A DNA stretch of 64,000 nucleotides from Octopus sinensis. Taxonomy: Eukaryota. The notes under the pieces were generated by a model. It saw only the letters and a program-made list of their open reading frames with translations, did not search any database and was not told the origin of the DNA. Below are positions 1 to 59,862 of this stretch, one piece after another. The first letter of the stretch is position 1. Each line of letters opens with the position of its first letter. The DNA is taken from contig NC_042999.1 in assembly GCF_006345805.1 (NCBI RefSeq), forward strand, positions 149,668,001 through 149,732,000, written 5' to 3'. The position numbers were made by a program, and so were the translations under genes.

Positions 1-286
1 TATGACTTAGTGTTATTCGACTCACCATCGCAAGGTCATGAGTTCGATTCTCGGCGGCGCCTGGTGTCCTTGAGCAAGACATTTTATTTCACATTTCCCC
101 GGTCCACTCAGCTCTCAAAAATGAGAGTACTTGTATTTCAGAGGGTGTGCCTTGTCACATATTACGTGTCATGCTGAATCTCCCTGAGAACTATGTAAGA
201 GGTACGCGTGTTTGGAGTTTTCAGCCACTTGCCCGTTAATTTCATGAGCATGCTGTTCCGTTGATCGGATCAATACTCGTCGTCGT
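1..286 (+). mobile_element. tRNA-derived SINE (head cut by window edge) carrying the SINE-C 3' module
   Basis: B-box-like GAGTTCGATTC at ~40, then GTGTCCTTGAGCAAGAC; the 3' half (CATGCTGAATCTCCCTGAGAAC...GTTGATCGGATCAA) matches 31540-31720 and the reverse complement of 19925-20090. Confidence 0.8.
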
Positions 287-632
287 TGTGAGTTCAAATT
301 CCGCCGAGGTCGACTTTGCCTTTCATCCTTTCAGGGTCGATAAATTAAGTACCAGTTATGCACTGGGGTCGATGTAATCGACTTAATATATATGTCTATC
401 CTTGTTTGTCCCTTCTATGTTTAGCCCCTTTTGGGTAATAAAGAAATAGGTATTTCGTCTGCCGTTACGTTGTGAGTTCAAATTCCGCCGAGGTCGACTT
501 TACCTTTCATCCTTTCGGGGTCGATAAATTAAGTACCAGTTACGCACGAGGGTCGATGTTATCGACTTAATACCTATGTCTGTCCTTGTTTGTCCCTTCT
601 ATGTTTAGCCCCTTGTGGGTAATAAAGAAATG
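287..632 (+). mobile_element. SINE-B tandem dimer, 5'-truncated
   Basis: Two copies of the core plus tail ending AAAGAAAT; internal junction AAAGAAATA|GGTATTTCGTC at 449. Confidence 0.9.
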
Positions 633-962
633 GGTAAGTTATACTGGGTCTCTGCTGTAAAGTGTCTTTGTTATGGACAGTGCACCACACCAGAGATACA
701 TTAAGGTCTATTGATCTTCGGTTGGTAGTTTGAGACTCGAGCAACTCAGCCGACTGTATCTCTCATTAGGCTTTCGTTAAGGTAAAAGTTATCGATCCGA
801 TTAATTGCTCTCTTTTTGCTGTAGTCAAGGAGAGAGAGGGCTGTTACGCTTTATAGAGAGCCAACAGCTGTTCAGAGCTAAAATGTACTTCTTCCTATGT
901 AATTCTATCATACGCGTCACCTAGAATGTAGCTGTTTGTATACAGCTATGTTGCTGCTAACG

Positions 963-5322: not shown

Positions 5323-5534
5323 CACACACACACACAGTGGCTCACATACAATATCTATACAACAGGATAAGTCTCAAGAGTACTTAATACGTCAAATGCA
5401 GCATTATTTTTGCTGTTTAGCTGTCAACAACTCTTGCGGTTATAACTCAGGGGTTTGGCCAGTGACACAGGACACTCTCTGTGAGCCCATGAACGACCGA
5501 GTAATGGGAGTTGAAGTCACTGACCGCTAAACTA

Positions 5535-5904
5535 TACTTTTCTACTCTAGGCACAAGGCCCGAATTTTTTAGGGAGGTGGGGAAGTCGATTAGATCGACC
5601 CCAGTACGCAACTGGTACTTAATTTATCGACCCCGAAAGGATGAAAGGCAAAGTCGACCTCGGCGGAATTTGAACTCAGAATGTAAAGACAGACGAAATA
5701 CCAATTTCTTTACTACCCACAAGGGGCTAAACATAGAGTGGACAAACAAGGACAGACAAACGGATTAAGTCGATTATATCGACCCCAGTGCGTATCTGGT
5801 ACTTATTTAATCGACCCCGAAAGGATGAAAGGCAAAGTCGACCTCAGCAGAATTTGAACTCAGAACGTAGCGGCAGACGAAATACCTATTTCTTTACTAC
5901 CCAC
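5535..5904 (-). mobile_element. SINE-A plus SINE-B tandem array
   Basis: Core repeated twice; junctions GAAATACC|AATTTC at ~5702 and GAAATACC|TATTTC at 5886. Confidence 0.9.
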
Positions 5905-6072
5905 ATTCAACGAAAAAAAAATTCCAACGATTACGGGATTGGCGGGGGAAACCCGAAGTAAAATTAAGGATTTGCAGTATATTAGGAGGTCAGGGTACTT
6001 GATTCCACGTAAAAAATCTTCTTTTTTTTTTTCTTAGTGAAAATCGTGCGGTTGTTAATATAGAAATTTACC
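5905..6072. mobile_element. Right end of the same MITE family as 1279-1758
   Basis: GATTTGCAGTATATTAGGAGGTCAGGGTACTTGATTCCACG...CTTAGTGAAAATCGTGCGG...AAATTTACC matches 1680-1758 and the left TIR. Confidence 0.8.
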
Positions 6073-6574
6073 ATAATATTGTTATTTAGCCTCAAATCAG
6101 TCCTGATACTGCAAACCTGTCATCAAAGACATTCAAACCTTCAGCAAACCTATCTTTTTAGGGATAATCTAGGACATTGCGTACAATGGGCGTGTGATTT
6201 AGGTAGGATGATACTTTGGCTGCTATTTTTTGCGTGTCGAGTGACCAGGTAGAGGCTCTTTCATTGGTTCGATTGCGTGATGAGAGTTTTTTTACTTATA
6301 CTTATATATGTAATATGCATATATACCATCGGCAGAAGTTAGAGGGTAAGTCAAAAGCTGAGAGTTTCGTGTATTGGCACTTATCAAACACGAATTTGTC
6401 CATTGTCACTCTGTAACTTCTGACGAAATAACTTCTAAAATGCAAAATTTTGTCAAAAACGTTAAGAGTAAACCCTGTTCTATGTGACACATTTTACCAG
6501 TATCGGAAGTTTGAAAGTATTTAGTTTTAAAAAATTCATGAAATAATCTGTACGTCTAATAGAATAAATCGGAA

Positions 6575-7212
6575 ATGGATGAAAGGCAAAGTCGACCTCG
6601 GCGGAACTTGAACTCAGAACGTAAAGACAGACGAAATACCGCTTCTAAAATACAAAATTCTAAAATACAAATTTTTTTCAAAAACGTTAAGTCGATCTAT
6701 CCTAGTACGCAAATGGTACTTAATTTATCGACCCAAAAGGATGAAAGGCAAAGTCGGCCTCAGCGGAATTAGAACTCAGAACGTAAAGACAGGCGAAATA
6801 CTTATTTCTTCATTGCCCACAAAGGGCTAAACATAGAGAGGACAAACAAGGATAGACAAACGGATTAAGTCGATTATATCGACCCAGTACGTATCTGGTA
6901 CTTATTTAATCGACACCGAAAGGATGAAAGGCAAAGTCGACCTCGGCGAAATTTGAAGTAAAGTCAGACAAAATACCTATTTCTTTACTACCCACAAGGG
7001 GCTAAACACAGAGAGGACAAACAAAAACAACCAAACGGATTAAGTCGATTATATCGACCACAGTGCGTAACTGGTACTTATTTAATCGACCCCAAAAGGA
7101 TGAAAGGCAAAGTCGACCAGGGCGGAATTTGAACTCAGAACGTAACGGCAGACGAAATACGGCTGCGTATTTCGCCCGGCGTGCTAACGTTTGTGCCAGC
7201 TCGCCGCCTTAG
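6575..7212 (-). mobile_element. Four-unit SINE-A/B tandem array
   Basis: Core GGATGAAAGGCAAAGTCG at ~6577, 6739, 6922 and 7098; complete head ends GCCAGCTCGCCGCCTT at ~7210. Confidence 0.9.
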
Positions 7213-7595
7213 CGAATAAGCATTCATTTTTAGAAAGATGTTCTTTATTCTTATTGCTAAAGCGTTACTTACTGACACAAAATTTCGTAACATTTTATCT
7301 CATAACTGTTTTTCTACTAATTTTTGTTCAATGCGACTAACGATTCTGAATTCTTCATGCATTTTTTTATCATTTAAGCCTAAGAAAAGCATAATTTTAA
7401 TTTAAAATTTAAAACCAAATCTCAAACTATTTATGCTAAAGTGTAGGTGAGGAGGTGTCCTCTTTAAAACTGTTAACAGTTTGCAATTTAGTTGAGAACT
7501 GAATTAGTGGCGAAGCTTAGAAGCTGCTGCGGTCGACGAAATGGTGGACTTTAGAATATATGACTGTGCATATATATACATGTGTGTGTGTGTTA

Positions 7596-25944: not shown

Positions 25945-26290
25945 CTTCTATGTGGTCGCCGAGCATGCAAGAAATAGCAGTCAAAACTTCCATAAAACTT
26001 CAAAAAAGAAGGTTGATGGATAACGTGTCGGTATGCATTATGACTGAAAGCTGACTTGATGGTCATTGCAGGAACATATATCTGAACTGCGGTTAAACAA
26101 CGACAGCAACAACAACAAGAGATTTGATGGAGATTTGGCAGCTATTTCTAGTATACTCGGTGCCATGTGGCTCCGAGTATGCTAGAAATAGCAGCCAAAT
26201 CTCCATCAAACTTCAAAAAAGAAGGTTCGATGGCCATGGTAGGAACTCATATGATCAGGTCTGAGCTAAACAATAATAACGACATTTTCC
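25945..26290 (+). mobile_element. Two tandem family E copies, the second with a fold-back 5' end
   Basis: ...AGAAATAGCAG.CAAA...CTTCAAAAAAGAAGGTT occurs twice, each followed by an (A)AC-rich tail. Confidence 0.7.
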
Positions 26291-26299
26291 TGTTAGTAG

Positions 26300-27200
26300 C
26301 AACAGCATCAACACCACAACATCCTATACAACAATCATCAACTCAACACACCACCACCACCACCTCCGCCACGGTCACCACCATCACCGCCTTTACCACC
26401 GTGCCCACCTCCTCTACATCAACACAACTATCACCAACGAAAACATCACCATCATTGCCACCACCACCACCACCACCATCACAACAACAATTACTTCAAT
26501 CGTTATTACCACTATTCACCCCACCGCCATTTCCACCAATACCAAAATCCCCAAAACTAATCACCACCACCACCATTATCCCCACCATCATCACCACCAC
26601 CACCACCACCACCATTATCACCACCACCACTACCACCATTATCACCACCACCACCACCACCATTATCACCACCACCATCACCACCACCACCATCACCATT
26701 ACTACCACCATTATCACCATCACCACCACCATTATCACCAACACCATCACCACCACCACCATCACCACCACCACCACCACCATTATCACCACCACCACCA
26801 CCACCATTATCACCACCACCACTACCACCATTATCACCACCACCACCACCACCACCATTATCACCACCACCACCACCACCATTATCACCACCACCATCAC
26901 CACCACCACCATCACCATTACTACCACCATTATCACCATCACCACCACCACCACCACTACTACCACCATTATCATCACCACCACCACCACCATTATCACC
27001 ACCACCATCACCACCACCACCACCACCACCATTATCATCACCACCACCACCACCACCATTATCATCACCACCACCATTATCATCACCACCACCACTACCA
27101 CCATTATCACCATCACCTTCACCACTACCACCATTATCACCACCACCATCACCACCACCACCACCACAACTACCACTCCTACCATCAGCACAGCAAAAAG
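26300..27200. repeat. Trinucleotide mosaic (ACC/ATC/ATT) with an 18-bp subunit and a ~219-bp higher-order repeat
   Basis: CATCACCATTACTACCACCATTATCACCATCACC at 26691 and 26910. Confidence 0.9.
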
Positions 27201-27544
27201 AAATACAAAAACTCTGTGTTAGCTTGACCTGTTAGAAATAGTGGCTAAAAACTGCCTCAAATCACACCTTGCACTTTTAATGAACCTTGAAGTACACAAT
27301 GTGTAGGAGAAATACAAGAAACTAAAAGAAGGAAAAACTAGCTGGTTTGTCATTATTGGAGCACCTTTAATTATACGTCTATAGGATGATGAGTGACCGA
27401 GGGTTAAACAACCGAAGTTGCTGCTGCTGCTGCTGCTGAACTTCAATACAGTTTTATATGACAAACTATAAATATTCGATATTTCCAATGAGTAGATAAG
27501 TACAACTCATCATCACGTGCTTCTACCCACCTCACCCCACCACT

Positions 27545-28180: not shown

Positions 28181-28590
28181 TATCTGATGAGATGGATTTA
28201 TAAATATGAAATTATTGAAACGAACATAATGAAGGATTTGAAAAAAATCAATAGTTTGCTTTCTGGAATTATTTCAATTTTATGGGGATCTTTTCCTGCG
28301 TTTTAGCTTCACTCCAAATATATGCAACTTTATACTTAAGTATGCAATGTCGGAATATAGGAGTTTAGACATGGCTTAGATATGGAGCCCTAATTCTTGT
28401 GATAATGCGTCACAGACATGTAAAGCACGTCATAAGTTTTTACACATACATACATACATACATACATACATGCATGCATACATACATATATACATACATA
28501 CATACATACATACATACATACATACATACATGCATGCATGCATACCTGCACACATGCATATATACATGCATGCATATATACATACAGTAT

Positions 28591-28836
28591 AAGTATTAAG
28601 TATTAAGGCGGCGAGCTGGCAGACACGTTAGCGCGCCGGGCGAAATGCGTAGCAGTATTTCGTCTGCCGTTACGTTCCGAGTTCAAATTCCGCCGAGGTC
28701 GACTTTGCCTTTCTACCTTTCGGAGTCGATAAATTAAGTACCAGTTACGCACTGGGGTCGATGTAATCGACTTAATCCCTTTGTCTGTCTTTGTTTGTTC
28801 CCTCTATGTTTAGCCCCTTGTGGGTAGTAAAGAAAT
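28591..28836 (+). mobile_element. SINE-B, full length, flanked by a ~90-105-bp direct repeat
   Basis: Head at 28605, tail AAAGAAATA at ~28836; identical 50-bp core in the flanks at 28541-28590 and 28878-28927. Confidence 0.92.
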
Positions 28837-28944
28837 ATATACATACATACATACATACATACATGCATGCATGCATGCATACCTGCACACATGCATATAT
28901 ACATGCATGCATATATACATACAGTATGTGTGCGCGCATGTACA

Positions 28945-30680: not shown

Positions 30681-31092
30681 CTATTTTGTATCTTTTTTTC
30701 TTTTATCTGTTTCAGTCATTTGACTGCGACCATGCTGGAGCAATGCCTTTAGTCGAACAAACCGACCCCAGGACTTATTCTTCGTAAGCCTAGTACTTAT
30801 TCTATCGGCCCCCGTTGCCGAACCGCTAGGTTTAGGGAACGTAAATTCACCACCATCGGTTATCAAGCGATGGTGGGGAGACAAACACACACACACAACA
30901 CACACACACACACACACACACACATAAATACATACATATATACGATGGCCTTCTTTCAGTTTCCGTCTACCAAATCCACTTAGCTCGAGGTTATAGTAGA
31001 AGACACTTGCCCAAGGTGTCATGCAGTGGGACTTAACCCAGAATCATGTGGTAGAGAAGCAAGCTACTTACCACACAGCCACGCCTGTGCCT
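30681..31092 (-). mobile_element. SINE-D, near full length
   Basis: Tail, internal (CA)n and head match the other copies. Confidence 0.9.
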
Positions 31093-31107
31093 ATATTCAT
31101 AATTCTT

Positions 31108-31320
31108 TACTATTATAGGCACAAAGTCTGCAATTTAGAGGGGAGGGTTTTAGTCGACAACATCGACGCCAGTACTCAACCGGTACTTAGTTTATCGACC
31201 CCGAAAGGATGAAAGACAAATCGACTTCGCAGGAATTTGAAGTTAGGACTTAAAGACGGACGGAATGCCGCTAAGCATTTTGTCCGGCGTGCTCAGGATT
31301 CTACCAGCTCACTGACTTCG
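31108..31320 (-). mobile_element. SINE-A
   Basis: CTATTATAGGCACAAAG tail and degenerate core and head. Confidence 0.8.
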
Positions 31321-31754: not shown

Positions 31755-31985
31755 AGAAGGCGGCGAGCTGGCAGAATCGTTAGCACACCTGGCGAAATGC
31801 TTAGTGGCATTTCGTCCGTCTTTACGTCCTTTACGTTCTGAGTTCAAATGCCACCGAGGTCGACTTTGCTTCTCATTCTTCCGGGATCGATAAAATAAGT
31901 AGCAGTTGAACACTGGGGTCAATGAAATCGACTTAACTCCTCCCTCTAAAAAGTTGACCTTGTACCAAAACTTGAAGCCTATAAA
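31755..31985 (+). mobile_element. SINE-A
   Basis: AAGGCGGCGAGCTGGCAGAATCG head, core and A-type tail. Confidence 0.85.
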
Positions 31986-32194
31986 AAGAAAAAAGATAGT
32001 CAGAAATATTTGGTTCATTTAATTTATTTATAAACAAAAAGGAAAAGTTCTAAAATTTTCCTCGAGAAATGGAGATCAAATACATCTTAAAGGTAAATGC
32101 TTTTGAGCAATTATTTCTTTTCATTTCCTTCGGACAATTTGAAGATATTTTAAATCTATATATATAAAGAAACGATACCGCCATAACTTTTGAC

Positions 32195-32559: not shown

Positions 32560-33359
32560 CTTGGTTGTGATGAGGAAGATGAAAACATTTTGGAAACAGT
32601 CATAACAGGTGGCGAATCGTAGGTCAAAGGTTATGGCCACGAGACAAAAGTTCAGTCTTCGCAATGGAAGACCCCCACCCCCACCCGACAAGACTTTAAG
32701 ACGTCAAGGAAATCCAAGAAAATGCGATGCGGTAACTGCTCGCTGTCCTTCAAAAAAGGAGTTCCAGGAATGCTTCCATCCATGGAAACGACCCTGATTA
32801 AAGTGTGTGACTTTTGAAGGGGTGAAACTTCAAACGAGATCAAATTGCCGAATTGATAGGTATTGTATGATAGGTATTGAAAAGGCAGCGAGCTGGCGGA
32901 AATGTTAGAACTCCGGGCGAAATACTTTACGGTATTTCGTCTGCCGTTACGTTCTGAGTTCAAATTCCACCGAAGTCGACTTTGCCGTTCATCCTTTCGG
33001 GGTCGATTAAATAAGTACCAGTTACGCACTGGGGTCGATATAATCGACTTCATCCGTTTGTCTGTCCTTGTTTGTCCTCTCTATGTTTAGCCCCTTGTGG
33101 GTAATAAAGAAATAGGTATTTCGTCTGCCACTACGTTCTGAGTTCAAATTCCACTGAGGCCGACTTTGCCTTTCATTCTTTCGGGGTCGATTAAATAAGT
33201 ACCAGTTACGCACTGGAGTCGATATAATCGACTTAATCCGTTTGTCTGTCCTTGTTTGTCCTCTCTGTGTTTAGCCCCTTGTGGGTAGTAAAGAAATAGG
33301 TATTGTATGATAGTTTTCTTTTTATAGCACTTGTCCCAATACTTTTTGACCAGTCCTCG
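32560..33359 (+). mobile_element. Internally deleted mariner (irritans-like) interrupted by a SINE-B dimer
   Basis: DENILETVITGGES*VKGYGHETKVQSSQWK; KKEFQECFHPWKR; right TIR GTCCCAATACTTTTTGACCAGTCCTCG|TA at 33333-33361. Confidence 0.75.
32874..33298 (+). mobile_element. SINE-B dimer with a 15-bp TSD
   Basis: GGTATTGTATGATAG at 32859-32873 and 33299-33313; internal junction AAATA|GGTATTTCG at 33115. Confidence 0.92.
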
Positions 33360-36063: not shown

Positions 36064-36254
36064 ATACAAACATTGTACATGATACTTGGTAAGCTGTGTC
36101 AGCCTACTTTTTCCATTATTTCTATGTCGGATGTAAAAGATTCCAACTGATGTTTAATATACGCCTTAAACACCTCTGATGAAATCTCTGGAATATTTTG
36201 ATGTGGTGTTGATACGAGGTTCATGTCTCAGATAAGTTTGGGATGGAGATGACG

Positions 36255-36535
36255 CCTTGAGTGGATTTGGTAGGCGGAAACTGAAAGAAGCCCGTCATAT
36301 ATATATGAGTGCGTGTGTGTGTTTGTGTGTGTATGTTTGTCCCCCTACCTCCACTTGATAACCTGTGTTGGCACATTTACGTCCCCGTAAATTAGCGGTT
36401 CGTAAAAGGAACGATAGAATAAGTACCAGGCTTTAAATAATAAGTATGGGGGTTGATTCATTTAACTAAAAAAATTCTTCAAGGCGGTGCCCCAGCATGG
36501 CCGCAGTCAAATGACTGAAACAAGTAAAAGAAAAA
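36255..36535 (+). mobile_element. SINE-D, 5'-truncated
   Basis: GTGGATTTGGTAGGCGGAAACTGAAAGAAGCCCGTC through CCAGCATGGCCGCAGTCAAATGACTG. Confidence 0.85.
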
Positions 36536-46250: not shown

Positions 46251-47821
46251 TTTCGTTTTTATTGGCTGTCTTGTATGCCGAAATATGGCTGCTGCATGCT
46301 GTAAGTGAATGAAGTAGACAACACTCCCCAGATGACTACTTCCAGTTCGTATCATGTTGCAATGGTGTTCATTTTCAAGGATTGACATACGCGAGCAGTT
46401 TATGTCCGACAGTAGCTTTCTTACTCAATGAAACCACCTAAAATACCATCGTTGATTTAAAACAGAGAAAAAAAAAACGTGAGATATGTCGTGCTGCTTT
46501 TGATAAAAAGAAACCCAATACAATATAGCAAAAAAATAAATACAATAAATAACTCATCTTTTTGCAACGATCTTTCGAAATCATGAATGATTTTGATGAT
46601 TAAGAAAATAAATAAATAAATGAGACCGTAAATGAATAAATTAGATGAAGGTTTATGTGAATGATTCATACAGACTAAATCACGCTGTGAAGATGTAAAA
46701 ATAGATAAGGTGAGGCATTTGTTACAGGATGTCTGAAGCTTGAAGCAAATAAATGTTTCGCAGTAGCATCGTTAATCGTCAGCTTATCGTTGTTTGAGTA
46801 ATGTCCTTCTCAATAAGAGGTGGCGGTCAGCCCAGGAAACCATTGAGTTATTGATGAGTCACCGAAGACTTCCTGTTCGTGTTTGCTATCGTTGATGCTG
46901 TTGCCGCCGCTGTTGTTGTTGTTGTTGTTGTTTTATTCTAGTTCATCTCTGATCGTGAAGGCTTATGGTCGAAGACAGTCCATAAGAAACATCCATTTTC
47001 GGTTTTATCATTTTTTAATTTTTTTGAGACAATATCTCTAGGTCTATGTTACTCATTGTATATTTTCATTTTTAAGGTACCAGGGTGTGATATGAGAGAG
47101 ATTCTCTAATTCTCTACCTCTAATCCATTTCTTGTACAGACCAATTTAAAGAGAATTGTCTATGGTCCTTTAATTTTTCAGGATTCCCACCCCTTACCCG
47201 ATACTGGTGGGAAGAAGAAGAGAACAAGCCGAAGATCTGGCCCTAAAACTTACAACAGAGTGAACTCCGTTAAAGGAACTCGAGGATCAACAGGTGATGC
47301 TTGACTCGGTGACAGAGTCTACTATACTTAAATACTGGTTTCAATTTTTTGCACAAGGCCAGCAATTTCGTAGGAGGGTCTAAGTCGATTACATCGAACC
47401 CAGTGCTCAACTGGCACTTATTTTATCGGCCTCGATAGGAACTCAATTTCTTTTATCTCTCCTATATTTATATGGCCATTGTTGGTGCAGAAGCCAAACC
47501 ATTTGCTATTCTAAACAGTCTTCCCCTGTTAGTTTCCTTCTCGTATGTGTACCCCTGACCAATGTATTAAAGTTGCTGACTCCTGTTCCCTCTTGTATTT
47601 TATGTCCGTTAACTGTTCAGGGGTCTGTTAGTTCTATGTTGGTTATCATTTATAATAAACGGGTTTACCTTGTGATCCAACCGAGACAACTAAGCAGGTA
47701 ACCAATACCATACGATTTCTCCACATCCCTGATACAAATAAACCTCACAACCCCTAAGCTGTCTAAAATACAGGTTTTGGTCCTTCATCCAAAACAAAAA
47801 AGAAATAAAGAAAATCCTACA

Positions 47822-50124: not shown

Positions 50125-50163
<39 letters not shown>
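49577..50163 (+). mobile_element. Family F element with (AAT)n tail
   Basis: ~550 bp lying between two (AAT)n tracts; ends CTCTCACTC(AAT)n. Confidence 0.85.
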
Positions 50164-50530
50164 CCTTTCTACTATAGGTACAAGGCTTGAAACGTTGGGG
50201 GAGGGGACCAGTCGATTAGATCAACCGCAGTACGCAACTGGTACTTAGTTTATTGGCCCCGAAAGGAATGAAAGGCAAAGTCAACTTCGGCGGAATTTGA
50301 ACTCAGAACGTGAAGACGGACGAAATACCTATTTCTTTATTACCCACAAGGGGCTAAACACAGAGGACAAACAAGGACAGACAAACGGAGTAATTCGATT
50401 ATATCGACTCCAGTGCGTAACTGGTACTTAATTTATCGACCCCGAAAGGATAAAAGGCAAAGTCGACCTTGGCGGAATATCCACCAAGCATTTCGCCCGG
50501 CATGCTAACGACTCTGCCATCTCGCCGCCT
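50161..50530 (-). mobile_element. SINE-A plus SINE-B array
   Basis: Junction CGAAATACC|TATTTC at 50329; further SINE-A copies at 50545-50700 (minus) and 50990-51205 (plus). Confidence 0.88.
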
Positions 50531-52835
50531 TAAGCTCAGCGATACATTAATCCTTTCTACCATAGGGACAAAAAAAATCCCTGGAATTTTGTGGGAGGGA
50601 GTTGGTCGACTGCATTGATCCCAGTGCTCAACTAGTAGTTATTTTATCAACCCCGAAAGGTTGAAAAAGGTTGAGTCGATCTCGTCGCAATTTGAATTCA
50701 CCTAGTCTTTCTTCCTTGGAACTGCAATGATTCTATAAATACAGGTTATAAAACCTTGTGTATTTATAGAATCTATCTCCAGATGAGCCATCTCATTTCA
50801 CTTATTTTCGAGATCGTACGTGCGATATTTTGGGTGAGGCCAATAATTGATTAGTCTAGAGAAGGATAGGCTCGGGAATACAGTCATAGATTTGCAAATA
50901 CACTTTTAAGGTTTCATGAATAATTTTGTCGATAGATGACTGCACAGTCTGTGGAGCAACGGGCGGAATTCTTTGCGATACTTAAGTTCTTTCAGAGGCG
51001 GGAGCTGACAGAATCGTTAGCAAAATGCTTAGCGGCATTTCGTCTGTCTTTACGTTTTGAGTTCAAATTCTGCCGACGTTGACTTTGCCTTCCATACTTT
51101 CGAGATCGATAAAATAAATACCAGTTGAGCACTGGGGTTGGTGTAATCAACATACTCCCTCTCCTGAAACTTCTGGTCTTGTGCCCAAATTTGAAACCGA
51201 TTTTTTAAGTCTCTTTGAACTTTGAATTCAAAATCTAGCTTGAAGCTGCTTTTTCTCCTCCTGGGGTTCAATACTGAGGCTGACGTTTTAGCTAAGTATT
51301 TTTCTCTTCACATTTATGAGCTATGTGCCTTTAAATACATGATAAATCTGATAGGCCATCAATGGAAGCTGGAAACTTAAGAAATAATAAATAACCTTCT
51401 TTCGTCTTTATGCCAAAAAATATTATTTTGTCTTTAATGTCTCATGGAAAAACATTTCTGCGTTTTTCATTTCTCACTGTCTTCTTTGAAGCTCACTTTC
51501 TCTTCTCTTCGTCTCTTATTTTCTTTTCCTCTAAGATTCATGCCAACTCCAATTAATCCCCCCCTTTCCTCTCCTTTTCTCCAAGATGAGAGAGAGAGAG
51601 AGAAAGAGATAGAAAGGGAGAGAAAGAGAGAGAAAGGGAAAGAGAGAGGGACAGAGGGCAAACGAGTGAGAGAGAGCAAGCGAGTAAGAGAGAGAGCAAA
51701 CAAGTGAAAGAAAGAGAGAGAGAGAGGAAGAGAGAGAGAGAGAGATGGGGCAAGCAGTTTCCGCTACACTAAGTTTCGAATCCTAGTTGTAGAAAACCAG
51801 TACCAAACATCTGTGTAATGTAGAAAAAAAATACATATAAAGAAAACAACGGTCTCTCCCTCTATCCATCTTTTTTTCTCTCTCTCTCTCCCTTTTTTCT
51901 CTCTCTTCCTCTTTTTTCTCTCTCTCAACCTCTCACCCTCTTTTTTCTCTCTATTCCTCTCTATCTCTATATCTATCTCGTTTCTCTTTCTCTTTATCTC
52001 TCTGTTTGTTTGTCTCTGTCTCTCTGTCTCCCATAAGAAAAGCAAATTCAGTTTTTCTTCCCTTTTACTTGATCTGTTTTCTGTCTTCCCTTTTAAATCC
52101 TCCTCTCTCTCTCTCTCTCTTTCCTTCTAAAGCTTCCTTCTCCCTTTCTCTCTCACTTATTTCATTTACTTTATCATTTCTCACCTCACGTCTCCTTCTC
52201 CTCCTCTCTCTCTCTTTCTCTCTCTCACTCACTCACTCTCTCTTTCTCTCTCTATCTTTCCTTTTTTATTCTGTGGTAAAAAAAAATAAGAAAAAAAAAG
52301 TCAAGAAAAACGACGACGCCAAAGCGGAAAGAAATGCCAGGTGCAGGTGTCTCCTTTTCTACCAGTGTCTGATGTCGCTGCAATGGCAATTTGCTATTGT
52401 TCAAAACGCGCATTTTGAGTTGCGTTGATCTGCTGTCGCTGCAGTTGCTTCTTGCTCTCTGCAGATATGGAACATGGAATTGTTTGCTACTATTGATTGA
52501 GAGAAGGTGGTGGCGGAGCGACAGAAACGATAGGCAGTCAGGTTTAAATGCCTCGCGGTACGTATTTACTGACGTTGCGAGTTCAATTCTCGCTGCAGCC
52601 AACTATTTTTGCATCTTAGGTTTCTGATGTCGTTAAAGCAAACAAAAACAAAAAAAACTACTAGAAACAATTTGAATTACAGACTTCTCCCTACCTTACA
52701 AAATTTTACCTGTGTTAGAATTCGTAATAATTAACGGAAAAGAACCAGTAGAGTGGCAGAAACGGTAGAGCTATTGGTTCACAAAAGGTGTGCCGCCGCA
52801 AGAAAATATAGACACATCACGGATTTATAAAGATA

Positions 52836-54319: not shown

Positions 54320-54583
54320 CACACACACACACACACACAAAGATAAATTGATAGATACAACTGAGTGGGCAAACAAAAATATGAGACACAGCCTAGTGCT
54401 TTTTTATGTTGATTAGTTTGTTCCTGTGAAACCAGTAAGTTTTGTGGATGTAAATAAATGAACAGCAGTTGTGAAGCAGTGATGAGGGCGAAACACAGAC
54501 ACAAAGACACACACATACACTTACATATATGCATATATATACGATTGATTTGTTTCAGTTCCTGTCTACGAAATCCATATATA

Positions 54584-57314
54584 TTGTTGTTGGCATCCTT
54601 TTTGTCACGAGAGACAATGGAGTTGCGCATCAAATAATCTAGTCCGGCTTTTACATTTCATGTCCTAATACATCTCCTGCTGTGGATGTGTAGTCCTATC
54701 CAGTACAACCACTCCCTCTGGCAGGTGCCGCAAATGTAGCGAAGACTTTGCCTGGCTGGTTGTAATGTCATACTTTCTTATTGACGTCTTTTCTTGTCTT
54801 TCTATTTCTCCTCTCCCTCTATGTCACTCCTTTGTGTTCCCTCTTTTACGGTAGGTTGCCAATCTCTACGGTTGCTGGCAACTACTTCCCAGTTGGTAAT
54901 ATTGATGTTGCAGGCATTCATGTCCCTTTTGCAAACATCCTTGTATCGTAAGAACGGTCTTCCCACAGACCTAGTGCCCCTAGCAAGCTCTCCGTTGAGT
55001 ATGTCGTTGGGGATTCTGCCATATTCCATACGGCTAACATGTCGAAGCCATCTCATACGTCTTTCTGTGAGGAGTGTAAACATGCTTGGTATTCCTGCTT
55101 GCTTGAGGACATCTTTGTTGGGGACATGATTCTGCCATTTAATGCGAAGGATTTTCCGGAGGCAGCGCAGGTGAAAGATATTTAGGCGACGTATGGCGTC
55201 GTATGGCGTGTGTATGGCGTCCAAGTCTCACTTCCATACAGTAGATTGCTAAGTACACATGCTCGGAAAATCTTCAATTTTGTGGTCTTGGTCAGCTTAT
55301 TGTTGTCCCATGCCCGTTTGGAGAGTTGGGCCATCACAGCAGCTACCTTGCCAATGCGTATATTGAGCTCAGTATCAAGGGATAGGTTGTAGGTGACGGT
55401 AGAGCCAAGATAGGTAAACTTCTCCACCTCCTGTAGTCTGTGGTCTCCAATATGTATGTTTGGGATAGTCGATGTCACCTGGCCCATGATGTTGGTCTTC
55501 TTGAGGCTGATAAATAAGCCAAAGTTGCCACATGCTTGCTCAAAACAGTTGATTAGCCTTTGTAGGGCTTCTTCTGTGTGTGATACCAGAGCGGCATCAT
55601 CAGCAAATAGCATCTCCTTGATGAGGACGCTTCTGATTTTGGTCTTGGCACGCAAACGCGAGAGATTGAACAGTTTCCCATCACTTCTACTGTGCAGAAA
55701 CACTCCATCATCTGATGTCACAAAGGCATGTGACTGCAGTGGCGAGAAGAAGATGCCAAATAATGTAGGAGCAAGGACACAACCTTGCTTTACCCCATTT
55801 TTTATTTGGAAGGCGGCTGATGTTGAACCATTGTGCTGTATGGTGCCTTGCATATCATCATGGAAAGATGTGATGATCCTCAGCAGCTTTGGTGGACGTC
55901 CGATTTTTTGGAGCATGATGAAGAGGCCTTTTCTACTTACCAAGTCAACGGCCTTTGTCAGATCAATGAAGGCCATATATAATGGCATTTTCTGCTCTCT
56001 GAACTTCTCCTGAAGTTGGCGTATGGAGAATATCATGTCAATAGTTGATCTGCTTCTTCTAAAGCCACACTGCGATTCTGGATAAATTCGAGAAGCAAGC
56101 AGTTGCAGCCTGGACAGGATAATGCGAGCAGAGGTCTTTCCAACAGTGCTTAGAAGAGATATTCCACGGTAATTGTTACAATCACCACGGTCACCTCTGT
56201 TTTTGTAAACCGTAATGATGTTAGCATCCCGCATATCTTGAAGGACTGTACCCTCCTCTCAACACTGACACAGAAGCTCATGAATGTGCCGAAGCAGGAT
56301 GGTGTTTTTGCCGGTTTTGATGATCTCAAATGGGATGCCGTCTTTTTCCGGAGCCTTGTTACTTGCTAGGGAGTCAATAGCCTTGGTGAGCTCTGCTATA
56401 GATGGCAGACTGTCAAGTTCACACATGACTGGCAAGATCTTGACACCCTCGATTGCAGCCTCAGCTACCGTGGTCTCTCGTGAGTAGAGATGCTGGTAGT
56501 ACTCCACCCATCTATCCATTTGCTTGCTTTGGTCCTTGATGAGATCCCCAGTAGTTGATTTCAGAGAGGCTGACTTGGATGCGGATGGACCGAGGGCCTT
56601 CTTCAAACCGGCATACATCCCACGGGTGTCGCCACTGTCAGCAGCTGACTGGATACTCTGACAGATTTCCTGCCAATACCTATTTGCACAGCGTCTGGCA
56701 GTCAGTTGGGTTTTATTTCTTGCCTTTCTGAGTTCTTCGAGTGACTTTATAGAAGAATCACTCTTGTATTACATCAGAGCTGCACGCTTTGTTTCGATAA
56801 GTGTTTCCAGCTCTGAGAGCCCAGCACTGAACAAAATCTGGGTTTTGCCTTTCTCTCATGCTGAAAGTATCTATTGATGTGGTATACAAAGCTTCCCTGA
56901 TATAATTCCACCTACTTTCAGCAGAGGGGTTTGGGCAGCTACTGAGGGCAACTTTGATAGAAACAGCAAAACATTTTCGCAGTGTAGGGTCGGGGGTTCT
57001 GGCAGTGTTAATGCGTGGTCGGCCCATTTTCTTGGAGTGATGGACTTTTTAGGCAGAATCCTCACCCTGCTTCTTATTAGTGAATGATCTGTGTCACAAT
57101 CCGCGCTGTGGTAACTACGAGTCAGTTGAACAGAATTCAGAAAGGGTCTTCGTGTAATGATGAGATCCAGCTGATGCCAGTGGTGAGATCTTGGATGTCT
57201 CCAAGATTCCTTATGGGATGTCTTGTTGGCAAAGAATGTGTTAGTGATGCACAGGTTATGGTATGTGCAAAATTCAAGTAGTCTCTGGCCATTGTCATTC
57301 ATGTTGCCAATACC
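54584..57314 (-). mobile_element. RTE-clade LINE, 5'-truncated, frameshifted APE-RT ORF
   Basis: ORF pieces 56871-57332 (APE: GNMNDNGQRLLEFC, HQLDLI, DTDHSL), 56259-56618, 55182-56234 (RT: GVKQGCVLAP, LFADD, FTYLGS) and 54802-55224; CxxC...GLHIHSRRC motif at 54667-54738; tail GGATGCCAACAACAA. Confidence 0.95.
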
Positions 57315-57543
57315 TATTTCTTTATTACCCACAAGGGGCTAAACATAGAGGGGACAAACAAGGACAGACATAGGTATTAAGTCGATTACATCGACCCAGT
57401 GCGTAACTGGTACTTAATTTATCGACCCCGAAAGGATGAAAGGCAAAGTCGACCTCGGCGGAATTTGAACTCACAACGTAACGACAGACGAAATACCGCT
57501 AAGCACTTCGCCCGGCGTTCTAAGGTTTCTGCCAGCTCACCGC
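57315..57543 (-). mobile_element. SINE-B, full length, fused to the 5' end of the RTE
   Basis: Sense junction AAAGAAATA|GGTATTGGCAACATG; head abuts the duplicated flank at 57543. Confidence 0.92.
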
Positions 57544-57616
57544 ATACACTTACATATATACATACATATATATACGATCGATTTGTTTCAGTTCCTGTCT
57601 GCAGAATCCATATATA

Positions 57617-57656
<40 letters not shown>

Positions 57657-57661
57657 TATAT

Positions 57662-57694
<33 letters not shown>

Positions 57695-58220
57695 ATGCAT
57701 ACACATACATACATACATATATATTTGGAATTTACAAAAGAAACGAACAAAAGACGAAGACGGGTGTGTAAACAGCAAACAGGTTTATTAGTTTAACGCT
57801 CCGGACTTAGGAATATTTATATAGGGAGTACTACTAATTTTAAAATTAGATATAGGGGACACAAGAATTCATTTATTCACCCCTATATAAAAAATTACTG
57901 ACATTTTAGTATGTTGTAAGCATAAATATTTAGCGTCTTATAATTTTCTTAAACTTTAAAATATAATTTTTTAGAATATAAAAGCTTTTTGAAAATACGG
58001 TCCAATTAGATCATTAGATCCAATGAACACTTATGCACAAACCTGTAATCTTAAATTATTTTTTTTTTTAGTAGTATATATCAGTACATTGGAATATTCC
58101 AATTGGCTATTATTTGCATGATTAACTAAAGTTAACCTTTCAATGATTTTCATTTCTTATTTAAACGTGGTATTCCTCTTGAAATCGTCAGGACCTGATA
58201 TAATGCTGTCACTTATTCAT

Positions 58221-59862
58221 TTCGAAGTCGTGAGTTAAATTTTGTTACTGCGTTGCACGTTAGTTTTGTTGAGCGTTTTTTGTTGTGCGGTTACACGGTA
58301 TTTGTCTGTCTGTGTCGAGACGGACAGGGACGGCCCCTCCCTGATGGGAGAGACGGCATGAGTGTTCGAGACCCTATCGGACTTGTCTGCGTCTGAGGAG
58401 GAGTTGGAGGAAGCGGTGGAAGGAATGGACCGGAAATTGGGTGATGCTTGTGCTGGAGTGGCCGGGGAGTCGGAGGAGAGAGAGTTGGACTTGGCCGGGC
58501 TGCCAAGTTGCCAGAAGTTTGTCAGGAAGGAGGGCGGTGAGGTGGAGTTGGCACCGCCACCAAGGCGTAGAGAATGGTACGAGGTGGGGACCATTGCATA
58601 CAGGGTCTATGTGGGCGGAAGGAGAGGGGTCGAAGTGGTGAATGTGGAATGGATGGAGGGGGCTCTGAGAAGAGCGGAGGAGGGGATAGCATTTCTGACA
58701 GGAGGTGTAAGCTGCGGTGCTATGGTGGTGCAGTTCGGGAGTGAAAATGTAGCAAGAAGGATGGCGGCGAGGGCAGTGAAGTCTGAGAGGGTGTTCCTGT
58801 TGCCCTCGTACCTAAACAGGAAGATCACTAGAATAGGGGTGGGTGGAGGGAGTGTCCCCAAGTGTCGAAGCTGAATGGATTGTGGCGGCTATGATTGGCG
58901 GTCGTGAGAAGGAGGTGGACATCCTCCACGCCACGGTGAAGATCGAGGGCTGGAGGGGCGCAACGCTGGACTTGAATGTGCAAGCGGAGGATGAAGTGCT
59001 GGAGAACCTGACGAGGAATATCAGAGTGGGAGGCGTGATCATGAGAGTGTGGGTCGAGGGCAGAGCTCCACGCTGTTACAAGTGTGGCCTGCGAGGGCAC
59101 ATAAGAGCTAACTGCCCTCCCCCAGAGAAAAATATGGATGCGGAACCACAAAGAGAGGCGGAAAAAGAGCAGAAACCAGAAGAGAAAGAGACAACAGAAG
59201 AAGAAGAGGCTTCAAAAGAATGGGAAGAAGCCAGGAAAAAGAGGAAGAGAAGAATAAGAGGAAAAGCAAACAGTACGGAACCCCAATCCACCCCAACACC
59301 ACCCATACCCTCTAAGTCCCACCCTCTCCCGGCAGACAGTGAACCCACCCGCTCCCCTCCAACAAGAAAACAGAAAAGAAAAGACACACACAACCAAGAT
59401 ACAAAAAATGAACCCAGGCCCAACATTGTATGTATGACGGGAAAGGAAAAGATTAAAAAGACAATGGAAGAATATCAATGGTGTGACAGAGGACCGATCA
59501 GATATGCAGTAATTGGAAAAGAACGAATGGACGAGTTTATGGTAATGTGTGAAAGGGAGGATTGGAAAGTAAGTGAAGTGAGAATGGTCGAAAAAATTAT
59601 GAGGGATTTGGAAGAGACGTTTGAAAGAAGGATGGAGATGGAAGGATTTTGTATATGAACTGAACAAGGAGCATTTGTGTGGGATTAATAACTAAAGGAC
59701 AGGTAAGTGATGCTAACAGATGGGGCCGTTAGCATCACTTTCATAATATTATTTTCAAAATTCATCTTTCATATCTATGTATCTGTGATGTTCTATGTCC
59801 CCAATGTCTTGTAGTGTCCCCTCTGTGTGGCCCCTAGTGGGCAATAAAGAAAAGTCAGTACC
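58221..59862 (+). mobile_element. ORF1-only non-autonomous Tx1/L1-type retroelement (HAL1-like), complete
   Basis: 17-bp TSD TGCTGTCACTTATTCAT at 58204-58220 and 59863-59879; single gag-like ORF; AATAAA at ~59843; no endonuclease or RT sequence. Confidence 0.88.
58344..59658 (+). pseudogene. ORF1-like nucleic-acid chaperone (~438 codons) with a CCHC zinc knuckle; one nonsense codon and one frameshift
   Basis: ATG at 58344 is in frame with ORF 58362-58874 but TGA occurs at 58359; +1 shift near 58850 joins ORF 58843-59658; RVWVEGRAPRCYKCGLRGHIRANCP fits CX2CX4HX4C. Confidence 0.8.

What the first reader, a model, noticed from the sequence alone, without database searches (positions are those of the whole stretch)
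54514..57616. Full-length SINE-B fused 5' to a truncated RTE LINE inside a single ~70-bp target duplication
Seen in sequence: the flank CATACACTTACATATAT...ATACGAT(T/C)GATTTGTTTCAGTTCCTGTCT...AATCCATATATA occurs at 54514-54583 and 57543-57616 with shared private variants. Between the copies, both on the minus strand, lie a complete SINE-B joined at AAAGAAATA|GGTATTGGC to the RTE APE domain, then the RTE through its CAACAACAA tail. No RTE sequence occurs upstream of the SINE and the SINE has no TSD of its own. Established: this 5'-small RNA / 3'-LINE layout matches U6-L1 chimeras formed by RT template switching. Inference: RTE RT jumped onto SINE-B RNA, a cross-clade capture if SINE-B is normally Tx1-mobilised, or a pre-formed SINE-headed RTE was copied.
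Basis: partly seen in the sequence, partly recalled or inferred. Interest (0 to 1): 0.8.

Follow-up and report, generated by a model that had tools for sequence, protein, structure and literature searches.

The report
SINE–RTE fusion inside one long duplication
In an octopus genome, a short mobile element (SINE) sits directly in front of a beheaded RTE-type LINE, and one 71-75 bp duplication of the insertion site encloses both; this is probably one chimeric retrotransposition event of a known kind, but two successive insertions are almost as likely.

Summary
On the minus strand the order is: repeat copy B (57617-57543), a SINE-B unit (57542-57315, about 4 nt short at its 5' end), a 5'-truncated and decayed RTE LINE (57314-54593) with its own 3' end and (CAA)3 tail, then repeat copy A (54584-54514). 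A and B are one duplicated locus, the middle of an old SINE-D copy. They share 8 derived positions against 8 other SINE-D copies, so they are not independent remnants. Neither part has a duplication of its own, and no 5' RTE sequence occurs elsewhere in the window.

Two points are new. First, the junction hexamer GGTATT is native RTE sequence (GGTACT in an O. bimaculoides copy). It is also what follows AAAGAAATA in SINE-B tandem arrays, so the joint carries a 5-6 nt overlap. Second, a plain SINE-B at 28605-28837 has its own ~88 bp duplication.

A single RTE event that switched template onto SINE-B RNA fits best (about 0.45). A SINE-B insertion with a long duplication, followed by an RTE insertion without one at its 3' end, is nearly as good (about 0.35). 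No cephalopod genome could be searched by DNA, so the deciding tests could not be run: junction copy number and the orthologous site. If it is a chimera, it is a new member of a known kind (U6/L1, Alu/L1). Interest is modest.

The parts
57618..57705 (.). (TA)n-rich microsatellite directly upstream (in element orientation) of repeat copy B. It is part of the pre-insertion locus, and the left edge of the duplication lies in it.
   Evidence: Sequence read; flank context.
57543..57617 (-). Repeat copy B (75 bp): the upstream copy of the duplicated target, made of a SINE-D middle segment plus TA/CA-rich sequence.
57315..57542 (-). SINE-B unit of 228 nt, from CGGTGAGCTGG... to ...GGGTAATAAAGAAATA. 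It lacks about 4 nt (AAGG) of the family's 5' end. It belongs to the sub-variant shared with the tandem array at 279-635.
57309..57314 (-). GGTATT overlap hexamer. It is native RTE sequence (GGTACT in L002), and it is also the sequence that follows AAAGAAATA in SINE-B arrays. The true breakpoint lies somewhere within it.
54593..57308 (-). 5'-truncated RTE LINE body. It holds the C-terminal third of the endonuclease, the reverse transcriptase, the C-terminal region and the 3' UTR. Frameshifts and stops break it into at least 5 ORF pieces.
54584..54592 (-). (CAA)3 microsatellite-like RTE tail. Base 54584 could belong to the tail or be the first A of the duplication.
   Evidence: PMC6007223 reports (CAA)n tails and A-initial TSDs in animal RTEs.
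54514..54584 (-). Repeat copy A (71 bp): the downstream copy of the duplicated target.
54470..54513 (-). Continuation of the old SINE-D copy beyond the duplication (TGTGTGTCTTTGTGTCTGTGTTTCGCCCTCATCAC...). It shows that the target was a resident SINE-D.

Best explanation
This is one retrotransposition event driven by the RTE machinery. Steps 1-3 are read from the sequence; steps 4-5 are inferred.

1. The target was the 3' half of an old SINE-D copy lying next to a (TA)n run.
2. The RTE endonuclease nicked the bottom strand in the TA run. Reverse transcription started on the (CAA)n tail of an RTE RNA and copied about 2.73 kb of it.
3. The top strand was opened about 71 nt downstream, at TAT^GTGTG. 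This gave one unusually long target-site duplication around the whole insert.
4. Inferred: when the growing cDNA ended in the complement of GGUAYU, in the endonuclease-coding region, it left the RTE RNA. It paired with GGUAUU at the 3' end (or a unit joint) of a SINE-B RNA of the array-forming type.
5. Inferred: the enzyme then copied that SINE-B unit almost to its 5' end, and the cDNA was joined to the upstream target end.

Ligation of the two RNAs before reverse transcription would give the same product and cannot be told apart here. The insert is old, about 3-5% diverged, and is not functional.
For: A single 71/75-bp duplication encloses both parts, and neither part has a repeat of 5 nt or more of its own. 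A and B are one locus, with 8 shared derived positions.

The RTE 3' end and (CAA)3 tail are intact and abut copy A to within 1 nt. The SINE-B 5' end abuts copy B. Both parts have the same orientation, with no filler between them.

The SINE side of the joint is the exact canonical unit end AAAGAAATA.

The RTE truncation point falls on GGTAYT. That hexamer occurs only 3 times in the 3.26-kb relative, so the chance of this is about 0.1%. It is the same hexamer that follows the SINE-B end in 9 of the other 14 SINE-B 3' ends in the window, counting GGTA at least. The SINE-B here carries the variants of the array at 279-635.

The ages are compatible. RTE window-specific changes are 4.75%, SINE-B is 4.9% from consensus, and the flanks differ by 7% pairwise.

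No 5' RTE sequence is anywhere else in the window.

SINE/LINE and small-RNA/LINE chimeras with this layout are documented for L1 (10.1101/2025.02.02.635956). Extremely long TSDs are a known outcome of 5'-truncated L1 insertions (PMC2912911).
Against: RTE-clade TSDs are mostly 7-15 bp (PMC6007223), and 71 bp is atypical.

A plain SINE-B at 28605-28837 has a ~88-bp TSD that ends at the same TAT^GTGTG motif. The long duplication may therefore be a SINE-B signature rather than an RTE one.

The 3' flank TATATAT is what normally follows solitary SINE-B ends.

Microhomology at the 5' joint of truncated LINEs is equally the hallmark of ordinary 5' attachment to resident DNA (PMC2912911).

There is only this one instance. 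No orthologous empty site and no copy-number data could be obtained.
Confidence: 0.45

Rival explanations
1. Two successive insertions. First, a SINE-B whose copy ended ...AAAGAAATAGGTATT, or a multimer, inserted into the SINE-D/(TA)n site by its own partner LINE and made the 71-bp duplication. Later, an RTE nicked the A/T-rich boundary just 3' of it and inserted without a duplication (blunt, or with a small deletion). Its truncated cDNA was attached to the resident SINE-B through the GGTATT microhomology.
For: Long TSDs do occur for SINE-B alone: about 88 bp at 28605-28837, ending at the same TAT^GTGTG motif. Solitary SINE-B ends are normally followed by TATA/ATAT, as here once the RTE is removed. 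SINE-B array ends followed by GGTAAG and GGTATT exist at 635 and 33298. Microhomology, deletions and altered TSDs are typical of 5'-truncated LINE insertions (PMC2912911). The related RTE copy in L001 shows no obvious TSD. SINE-B is dense in this window, with about 30 segments in 64 kb, so chance adjacency is not negligible.
Against: It needs the RTE nick to fall within a few nt of the SINE-B/duplication boundary, leaving no SINE-B remnant 3' of the RTE, and it needs an RTE insertion without a TSD. If a multimer was partly deleted, nothing explains why the upstream break sits exactly at a unit end. The RTE is not visibly younger than the flank pair.
Confidence: 0.35
2. A copy of a pre-formed chimeric element. 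A SINE-B/RTE fusion already existed elsewhere, was transcribed, and was retrotransposed by RTE proteins through its RTE 3' end. That would make it a proto-SINE with a SINE-B head.
For: It gives the same end product and explains the single duplication. Chimeras of RTE LINEs with tRNA or 5S RNA are thought to have seeded SINEs (Kojima 2018, as cited in 10.1101/2025.02.02.635956). Module exchange among mollusc SINEs is documented (PMC4758252).
Against: There is no second copy of the junction in the window, in 76 kb of O. bimaculoides and O. vulgaris loci, or among predicted proteins. A pol III transcript from the SINE-B head would meet T4 runs 43, 344 and 479 nt after the joint. A pol II transcript has no reason to start at the SINE-B 5' end.
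Confidence: 0.1
3. Not a TPRT product. A DNA-level rearrangement, such as replication template switching or double-strand-break repair that captured cDNAs or ectopic DNA, produced both the 71-bp duplication and the SINE-B/RTE joint.
For: Microhomology at the internal joint. A duplication length that is unusual for LINE endonuclease staggering.
Against: The RTE ends precisely at its native 3' terminus with its microsatellite tail, abutting the duplication. That is the signature of target-primed reverse transcription. The SINE-B starts within 4 nt of its transcript start.
Confidence: 0.05
4. The two flanks are independent SINE-D remnants that happen to bracket two unrelated insertions.
For: The flank core does belong to a multi-copy SINE family.
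Against: A and B are 91-93% identical to each other, against 82% or less to any other copy. They share 8 derived positions, the same 5' truncation into TATATAT, and the same non-family tail GTAAGTGTATG.
Confidence: 0.02

Closest known systems
Alu/LINE-1 and U6/LINE-1 chimeric insertions of mammals (bipartite chimeric retrocopies; 10.1101/2025.02.02.635956; Buzdin et al. 2003 as cited in PMC4758252)
   Same: A sense-oriented, essentially full-length pol III-type RNA copy is fused directly to a 5'-truncated LINE that keeps its 3' end. One TSD surrounds both. The proposed origin is RT template switching or RNA ligation.
   Different: The driver here is an RTE-clade element with a (CAA)n tail, not L1 with poly(A). 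The TSD is 71-75 bp against 9-19 bp. The joint shows a 5-6 nt overlap. Contemporaneous insertion is not shown by comparative data.
SINE genesis and module exchange by LINE RT template switching (RTE + tRNA/5S chimeras, Kojima 2018 as cited in 10.1101/2025.02.02.635956; mollusc 'jigsaw' SINEs, PMC4758252)
   Same: A pol III-type head joined to an RTE 3' end. Other SINE families in the window share heads and bodies but carry different tails.
   Different: This copy keeps 2.7 kb of LINE, is single-copy as far as could be seen, and contains pol III terminators. It is not a working SINE.
5'-truncated LINE insertions with altered target sites (very long TSDs, deletions, microhomology-mediated 5' attachment; PMC2912911, which cites Gilbert et al. 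and Zingler et al.)
   Same: A 5'-truncated LINE, a microhomology at the 5' joint, and a non-canonical target-site outcome.
   Different: That work concerns human L1. Here the sequence 5' of the LINE is a complete mobile element unit rather than arbitrary target DNA.
5' end switching of plant RTE LINEs (SolRTE, 10.1101/2022.11.04.512097)
   Same: An RTE-clade element that acquires a foreign 5' part, with template switching discussed as the cause.
   Different: That work describes whole families with new 5' UTRs on intact ORFs. Here there is one dead copy truncated inside the endonuclease.

Membership tests
LINE-mediated bipartite chimeric retrocopy (U6/L1, Alu/L1 type) | The 5' part is a sense-oriented copy of a small or pol III-type RNA that reaches its 5' end. 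| tested here: met
   SINE-B 57542-57315 has the same orientation as the RTE and lacks only about 4 nt of the family's 5' end.
LINE-mediated bipartite chimeric retrocopy (U6/L1, Alu/L1 type) | The 3' part is a 5'-truncated LINE with its native 3' end and tail. | tested here: met
   Homology to L002 starts at 57314. The 3' end and CAA tail match L001.
LINE-mediated bipartite chimeric retrocopy (U6/L1, Alu/L1 type) | Direct fusion, with one TSD around the whole and none around either part. | tested here: met
LINE-mediated bipartite chimeric retrocopy (U6/L1, Alu/L1 type) | TSD length and target are typical of the driving LINE. | tested here: not met
   71-75 bp against 7-15 bp for the RTE clade in the literature (PMC6007223). 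The TSD length distribution of this octopus family is unknown.
LINE-mediated bipartite chimeric retrocopy (U6/L1, Alu/L1 type) | Both parts arrived together: an empty site in an outgroup and no intermediate with only one part. | not testable with these tools
   No cephalopod genome can be searched by DNA here. Exact-protein look-ups and a metagenome scan found nothing.
RTE-clade non-LTR retrotransposon | An apurinic-type endonuclease followed by a reverse transcriptase, with close homology to RTE-type proteins. | tested here: met
   RVT_1 E=1.6e-30. Exo_endo_phos_2 is weak (E=0.0037, below the cut-off) because only the last third is present. Identity is 91% to an O. bimaculoides endonuclease ORF and 79% to its RT ORF. 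No phylogeny was made, so 'RTE' rests on the (CAA)n tail, the short 3' UTR, and the 'craniofacial development protein 2-like' naming of relatives.
RTE-clade non-LTR retrotransposon | A short 3' UTR ending in a microsatellite-like repeat. | tested here: met
   (CAA)3 at 54592-54584; CAACAA in L001.
tRNA-derived SINE (for 'SINE-B') | A tRNA-like head with a pol III promoter. | tested here: inconclusive
   ARAGORN finds no tRNA in the window. Rfam gives no tRNA match over 54400-57800 at E<=1. A B-box-like GAGTTCAAATTCC is seen by eye only.
tRNA-derived SINE (for 'SINE-B') | Short, multi-copy and dispersed, with TSDs. | tested here: met
   About 30 segments in the window. TSDs of 20 bp, 15-18 bp and about 88 bp.
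Nested insertion with LINE-mediated target alteration (rival) | The older element carries its own TSD, and the younger LINE lacks one and joins through microhomology. | tested here: inconclusive
   The pattern is compatible. However, the order of arrival cannot be read from the divergences.

The most novel reading that the evidence does not exclude
GGUAUU-guided template switching onto the 3' end of SINE-B RNA is a recurrent process in this octopus lineage. The same joint, AAAGAAATA|GGTATT, links SINE-B units into arrays. It also links SINE-B to a sister SINE with a different tail, and here links SINE-B to an RTE LINE. The SINE-B 3' end would then be a preferred acceptor for reverse transcriptases of more than one LINE clade. 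That would be a sequence-guided way of shuffling modules, and could help explain the very large number of SINE families reported for Octopus vulgaris.
Probability: 0.2. Interest if true: 0.55.

Novelty: new member of a known kind. Interest (0 to 1): 0.3.

Why it matters
If this is a single event, it is direct evidence that an RTE-clade reverse transcriptase in a cephalopod can switch from its own RNA to a SINE RNA that does not share its tail. SINE origin models assume this step, but it is mostly documented for mammalian L1. Together with the invariant AAAGAAATA|GGTATT joints in SINE-B arrays, it suggests a testable, sequence-guided route to composite SINEs in a genome where SINEs make up about 12% of the DNA. 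If the history is sequential, the locus is an ordinary nested insertion. What would then be worth keeping is that SINE-B insertions in TA/TG-rich DNA can carry 70-90 bp target duplications.

Tried and rejected
1. Independent SINE-D remnants: rejected.
2. SINE-B inserted later into a longer RTE: rejected. There is no RTE 5' sequence in the window by blastn or tblastn, and no SINE-B TSD.
3. RTE first, then SINE-B at its 5' joint: rejected. There is no SINE-B TSD and no TA-type SINE-B target at the joint.
4. Pol III read-through of a fused master copy: unlikely because of T4 runs.
5. Looking for the same locus or other junction copies led nowhere. Exact look-ups of the two largest window ORFs found nothing. 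The junction pattern is absent from loci L001-L003 and from JGI metagenome contigs. The protein search with the junction-spanning ORF gave no hit covering the SINE-derived N-terminus. None of these collections can be searched for cephalopod DNA, so these nulls are uninformative.
6. TSD of the related RTE copy in L001: none found. L002 is rearranged at its 3' end. The family's usual TSD length therefore stays unknown.
7. Identity of the SINE-B partner LINE ('Tx1'): not assignable. ORFs at 58362-59658 gave only a weak zf-CCHC Pfam hit and two O. vulgaris hypothetical proteins.
8. The window-wide repeat finder was swamped by microsatellites. It was replaced by a masked self-blast.
9. A second SINE-B-to-LINE joint downstream of the array end at 635: no LINE-like ORFs there.
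10. ARAGORN and Rfam gave no tRNA call for the SINE-B head.
Full report
**Source.** The window is cephalopod DNA. The reverse-transcriptase ORF inside the finding (55182-56234, minus) has its best database relative in Octopus bimaculoides (79% identity). The endonuclease piece (56871-57332, minus) matches an O. bimaculoides 'craniofacial development protein 2-like' ORF at 91%. I fetched three loci for comparison. L001 and L002 are O. bimaculoides RTE copies. L003 is an O. vulgaris locus. None of the available collections allows a DNA search of a cephalopod genome, and that limits what could be decided.

**The observation.** The two flanks are real. Segment 54514-54584 aligns with 57543-57617 with 5 mismatches and one 4-bp indel (blastn E=9e-19). 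After low-complexity masking, this is one of only two low-copy direct-repeat pairs of 35-250 bp lying within 7 kb of each other in the window.

Other copies lie at about 2826, 21391, 25677, 30985, 34016 and 36255 and are only 67-82% identical to copy A. In an alignment with eight other copies, A and B agree with each other and differ from the family at 8 positions where at least 6 of 8 copies agree. Both are cut off at the same place into TATATAT, and both carry the same non-family stretch GTAAGTGTATG. SINE-D sequence continues beyond A only.

**The interior, read on the minus strand.**
- SINE-B occupies 57542-57315. It is 4.9% from the consensus of 14 other window copies and lacks about 4 nt (AAGG) of the family's 5' end. 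It ends at the canonical unit end ...AATAAAGAAATA.
- The RTE follows at once. blastn homology to the near-full-length L002 begins exactly at 57314 (L002 position 6490), 91.5% over 2663 nt. That is codon 163-164 of a 261-codon endonuclease ORF.
- The RTE runs to its native 3' end and (CAA)3 tail, as in L001. Pfam finds RVT_1 (E=1.6e-30) and a weak endonuclease match. The frame is broken into at least five pieces.
- The missing 5' part of the RTE is nowhere else in the window.
- No direct repeat of 5 nt or more brackets the SINE-B alone or the RTE alone.

The hexamer GGTATT at the joint (57314-57309) has two possible origins.
- It is native RTE sequence, since L002 has GGTACTGGCAAC at that place.
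- It is also the sequence that follows AAAGAAATA in SINE-B tandem arrays, where unit position 231 is joined to position 46 (GGTATTTCGTC).

Of the other 14 SINE-B 3' ends in the window, seven run on into another unit in this way. Two array ends are followed by GGTAAG or GGTATTG. Five are solitary and followed by other sequence, four of these by TATA/ATAT-type sequence. GGTAYT occurs only three times in the 3.26-kb L002 element, so a truncation point landing on it by chance has a probability of about 0.1%. The SINE-B in the composite also carries the variants of the array at 279-635. I conclude that the joint was made through a 5-6 nt overlap with a SINE-B molecule that continued past AAAGAAATA into GGTATT.

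**Single-event reading.** An RTE ribonucleoprotein nicked the TA run and primed on the (CAA)n tail. It copied 2.73 kb of RTE RNA and then moved to a SINE-B RNA where the cDNA end could pair with GGUAUU. It copied that unit nearly to its 5' end, and the second strand was opened 71 nt downstream.

This explains every boundary without coincidence:
- one duplication around the whole insert;
- the RTE tail abutting copy A;
- the SINE-B 5' end abutting copy B;
- the canonical SINE-B unit end at the joint.

The layout is that of U6/L1 and Alu/L1 chimeras. For those, 113 Alu/L1 cases with TSDs have been listed, and template switching or RNA ligation is proposed (10.1101/2025.02.02.635956). The ages are compatible: 4.75% window-specific change in the RTE, 4.9% in SINE-B, and 7% between the flanks, or about 3.5% per copy.

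The weak point is the duplication length. RTE-clade TSDs are mostly 7-15 bp (PMC6007223). However, extremely long TSDs are a recognised outcome of 5'-truncated L1 insertions (PMC2912911).

**Sequential reading.** While checking TSDs of other SINE-B copies, I found that the monomer at 28605-28837 is flanked by a direct repeat of about 88 bp with a 46-nt perfect core (28500-28587 against 28838-28926). Other SINE-B TSDs are 20 bp and 15-18 bp. That long duplication ends at TAT^GTGTG, as does the one in the finding. Solitary SINE-B ends are usually followed by TATA or ATAT, which is what follows the composite once the RTE is removed.

So a SINE-B ending ...AAATAGGTATT could have inserted first with a 71-bp TSD. 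An RTE could then have nicked the A/T-rich boundary and inserted without a TSD, its truncated cDNA attached by GGTATT microhomology. That is the ordinary way 5'-truncated LINEs are joined (PMC2912911). This reading needs the RTE nick to fall within a few nucleotides of the SINE-B end, and it needs an RTE insertion without a TSD. Rough estimates of the rates put the two histories within an order of magnitude of each other. I rate the single event at 0.45 and the sequential history at 0.35.

**Minor rivals.**
- A copy of a pre-formed fused element (0.1). There is no second junction in the window, in L001-L003, or among predicted proteins. Five T4 runs lie in the RTE sense strand, the first 43 nt after the joint, which argues against a pol III transcript from the SINE head.
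- A DNA-level rearrangement (0.05). The RTE ends at its native terminus with its tail, which is the mark of target-primed reverse transcription.

**The 'cross-clade' clause.** The SINE-B tail does not resemble the RTE tail. It does resemble, at 83% over 47 nt, the 3' end of another element at 59800-59855 that follows ORFs at 58362-59658. SINE-B is therefore probably not an RTE partner. I could not assign that element to Tx1 or to any other clade.

**Verdict.** If it is a chimera, it is a new member of a known kind, driven by an RTE rather than by L1, with an unusually long duplication and a microhomology joint. The decisive tests are junction copy number in the genome and the state of the orthologous site in related octopuses. 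Both are simple with a searchable cephalopod assembly.

Noticed in passing
window 28500-28926: The SINE-B monomer at 28605-28837 (+) is flanked by a direct repeat of about 88 bp (28500-28587 vs 28838-28926) with a 46-nt perfect core plus (CATA)n/(GCAT)n. There are 14 extra nt (AAGTATTAAGTATT) at the 5' joint. This duplication ends at TAT^GTGTG, like the one in the finding.
   Followed up: partly
window 279-635, 5583-5905, 6574-7206, 32890-33298, 50210-50478: SINE-B occurs as head-to-tail arrays of unit 46-231 with an invariant joint AAAGAAATA|GGTATTT(C/T)GTC. The dimer at 32890-33298 has a 15-18 bp TSD that itself begins (ATA)GGTATT.
   Followed up: partly
window 5500-5702, 50130-50329, 31080-31312, 31761-32000, 47300-47440, 51002-51230: A sister SINE shares the head and body of SINE-B (positions 1 to about 165) but has a different tail (...CCCCxCCTCCCTAAAAAATTxGGGCCTTGTGCCTAGAGTAGAAA, sometimes followed by (ATT)n). 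At two sites a SINE-B unit is joined to it through the same AAATA|GGTATT joint.
   Followed up: partly
window 58362-59860 (+): ORFs at 58362-58874 and 58843-59658 (weak zf-CCHC hit; two O. vulgaris hypothetical proteins as the only relatives) are followed at 59800-59855 by a 3' end that is 83% identical over 47 nt to the SINE-B tail. This is a candidate source or partner of the SINE-B tail; its clade is not determined.
   Followed up: partly
window 25950-26019 and 26165-26233: A second low-copy direct repeat (71 bp, 87% identity) whose copies lie only 146 bp apart. Its nature is unknown.
   Followed up: no
window 36143-36232 (-): A short RTE-like protein-coding fragment (tblastn 53-57% over 30 aa) lies directly beside a 5'-truncated SINE-D copy at 36250-36345 (+).
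   Followed up: no
window 26340-27110: A long CCA/CAC/CAT-rich minisatellite produces a spurious 351-aa ORF (26167-27222). The window as a whole is very rich in (TA)n, (TG)n, (CATA)n and (GATA)n tracts.
   Followed up: no
L001, L002 (O. bimaculoides) and L003 (O. vulgaris): SINE-B with the AAAGAAATA tail is absent from 26 kb of O. bimaculoides sequence and present once in 49 kb of O. vulgaris (L003, about 7121-7273, minus strand), against 15 such ends in the 64-kb window. This may be chance, local density, or a species difference.
   Followed up: no
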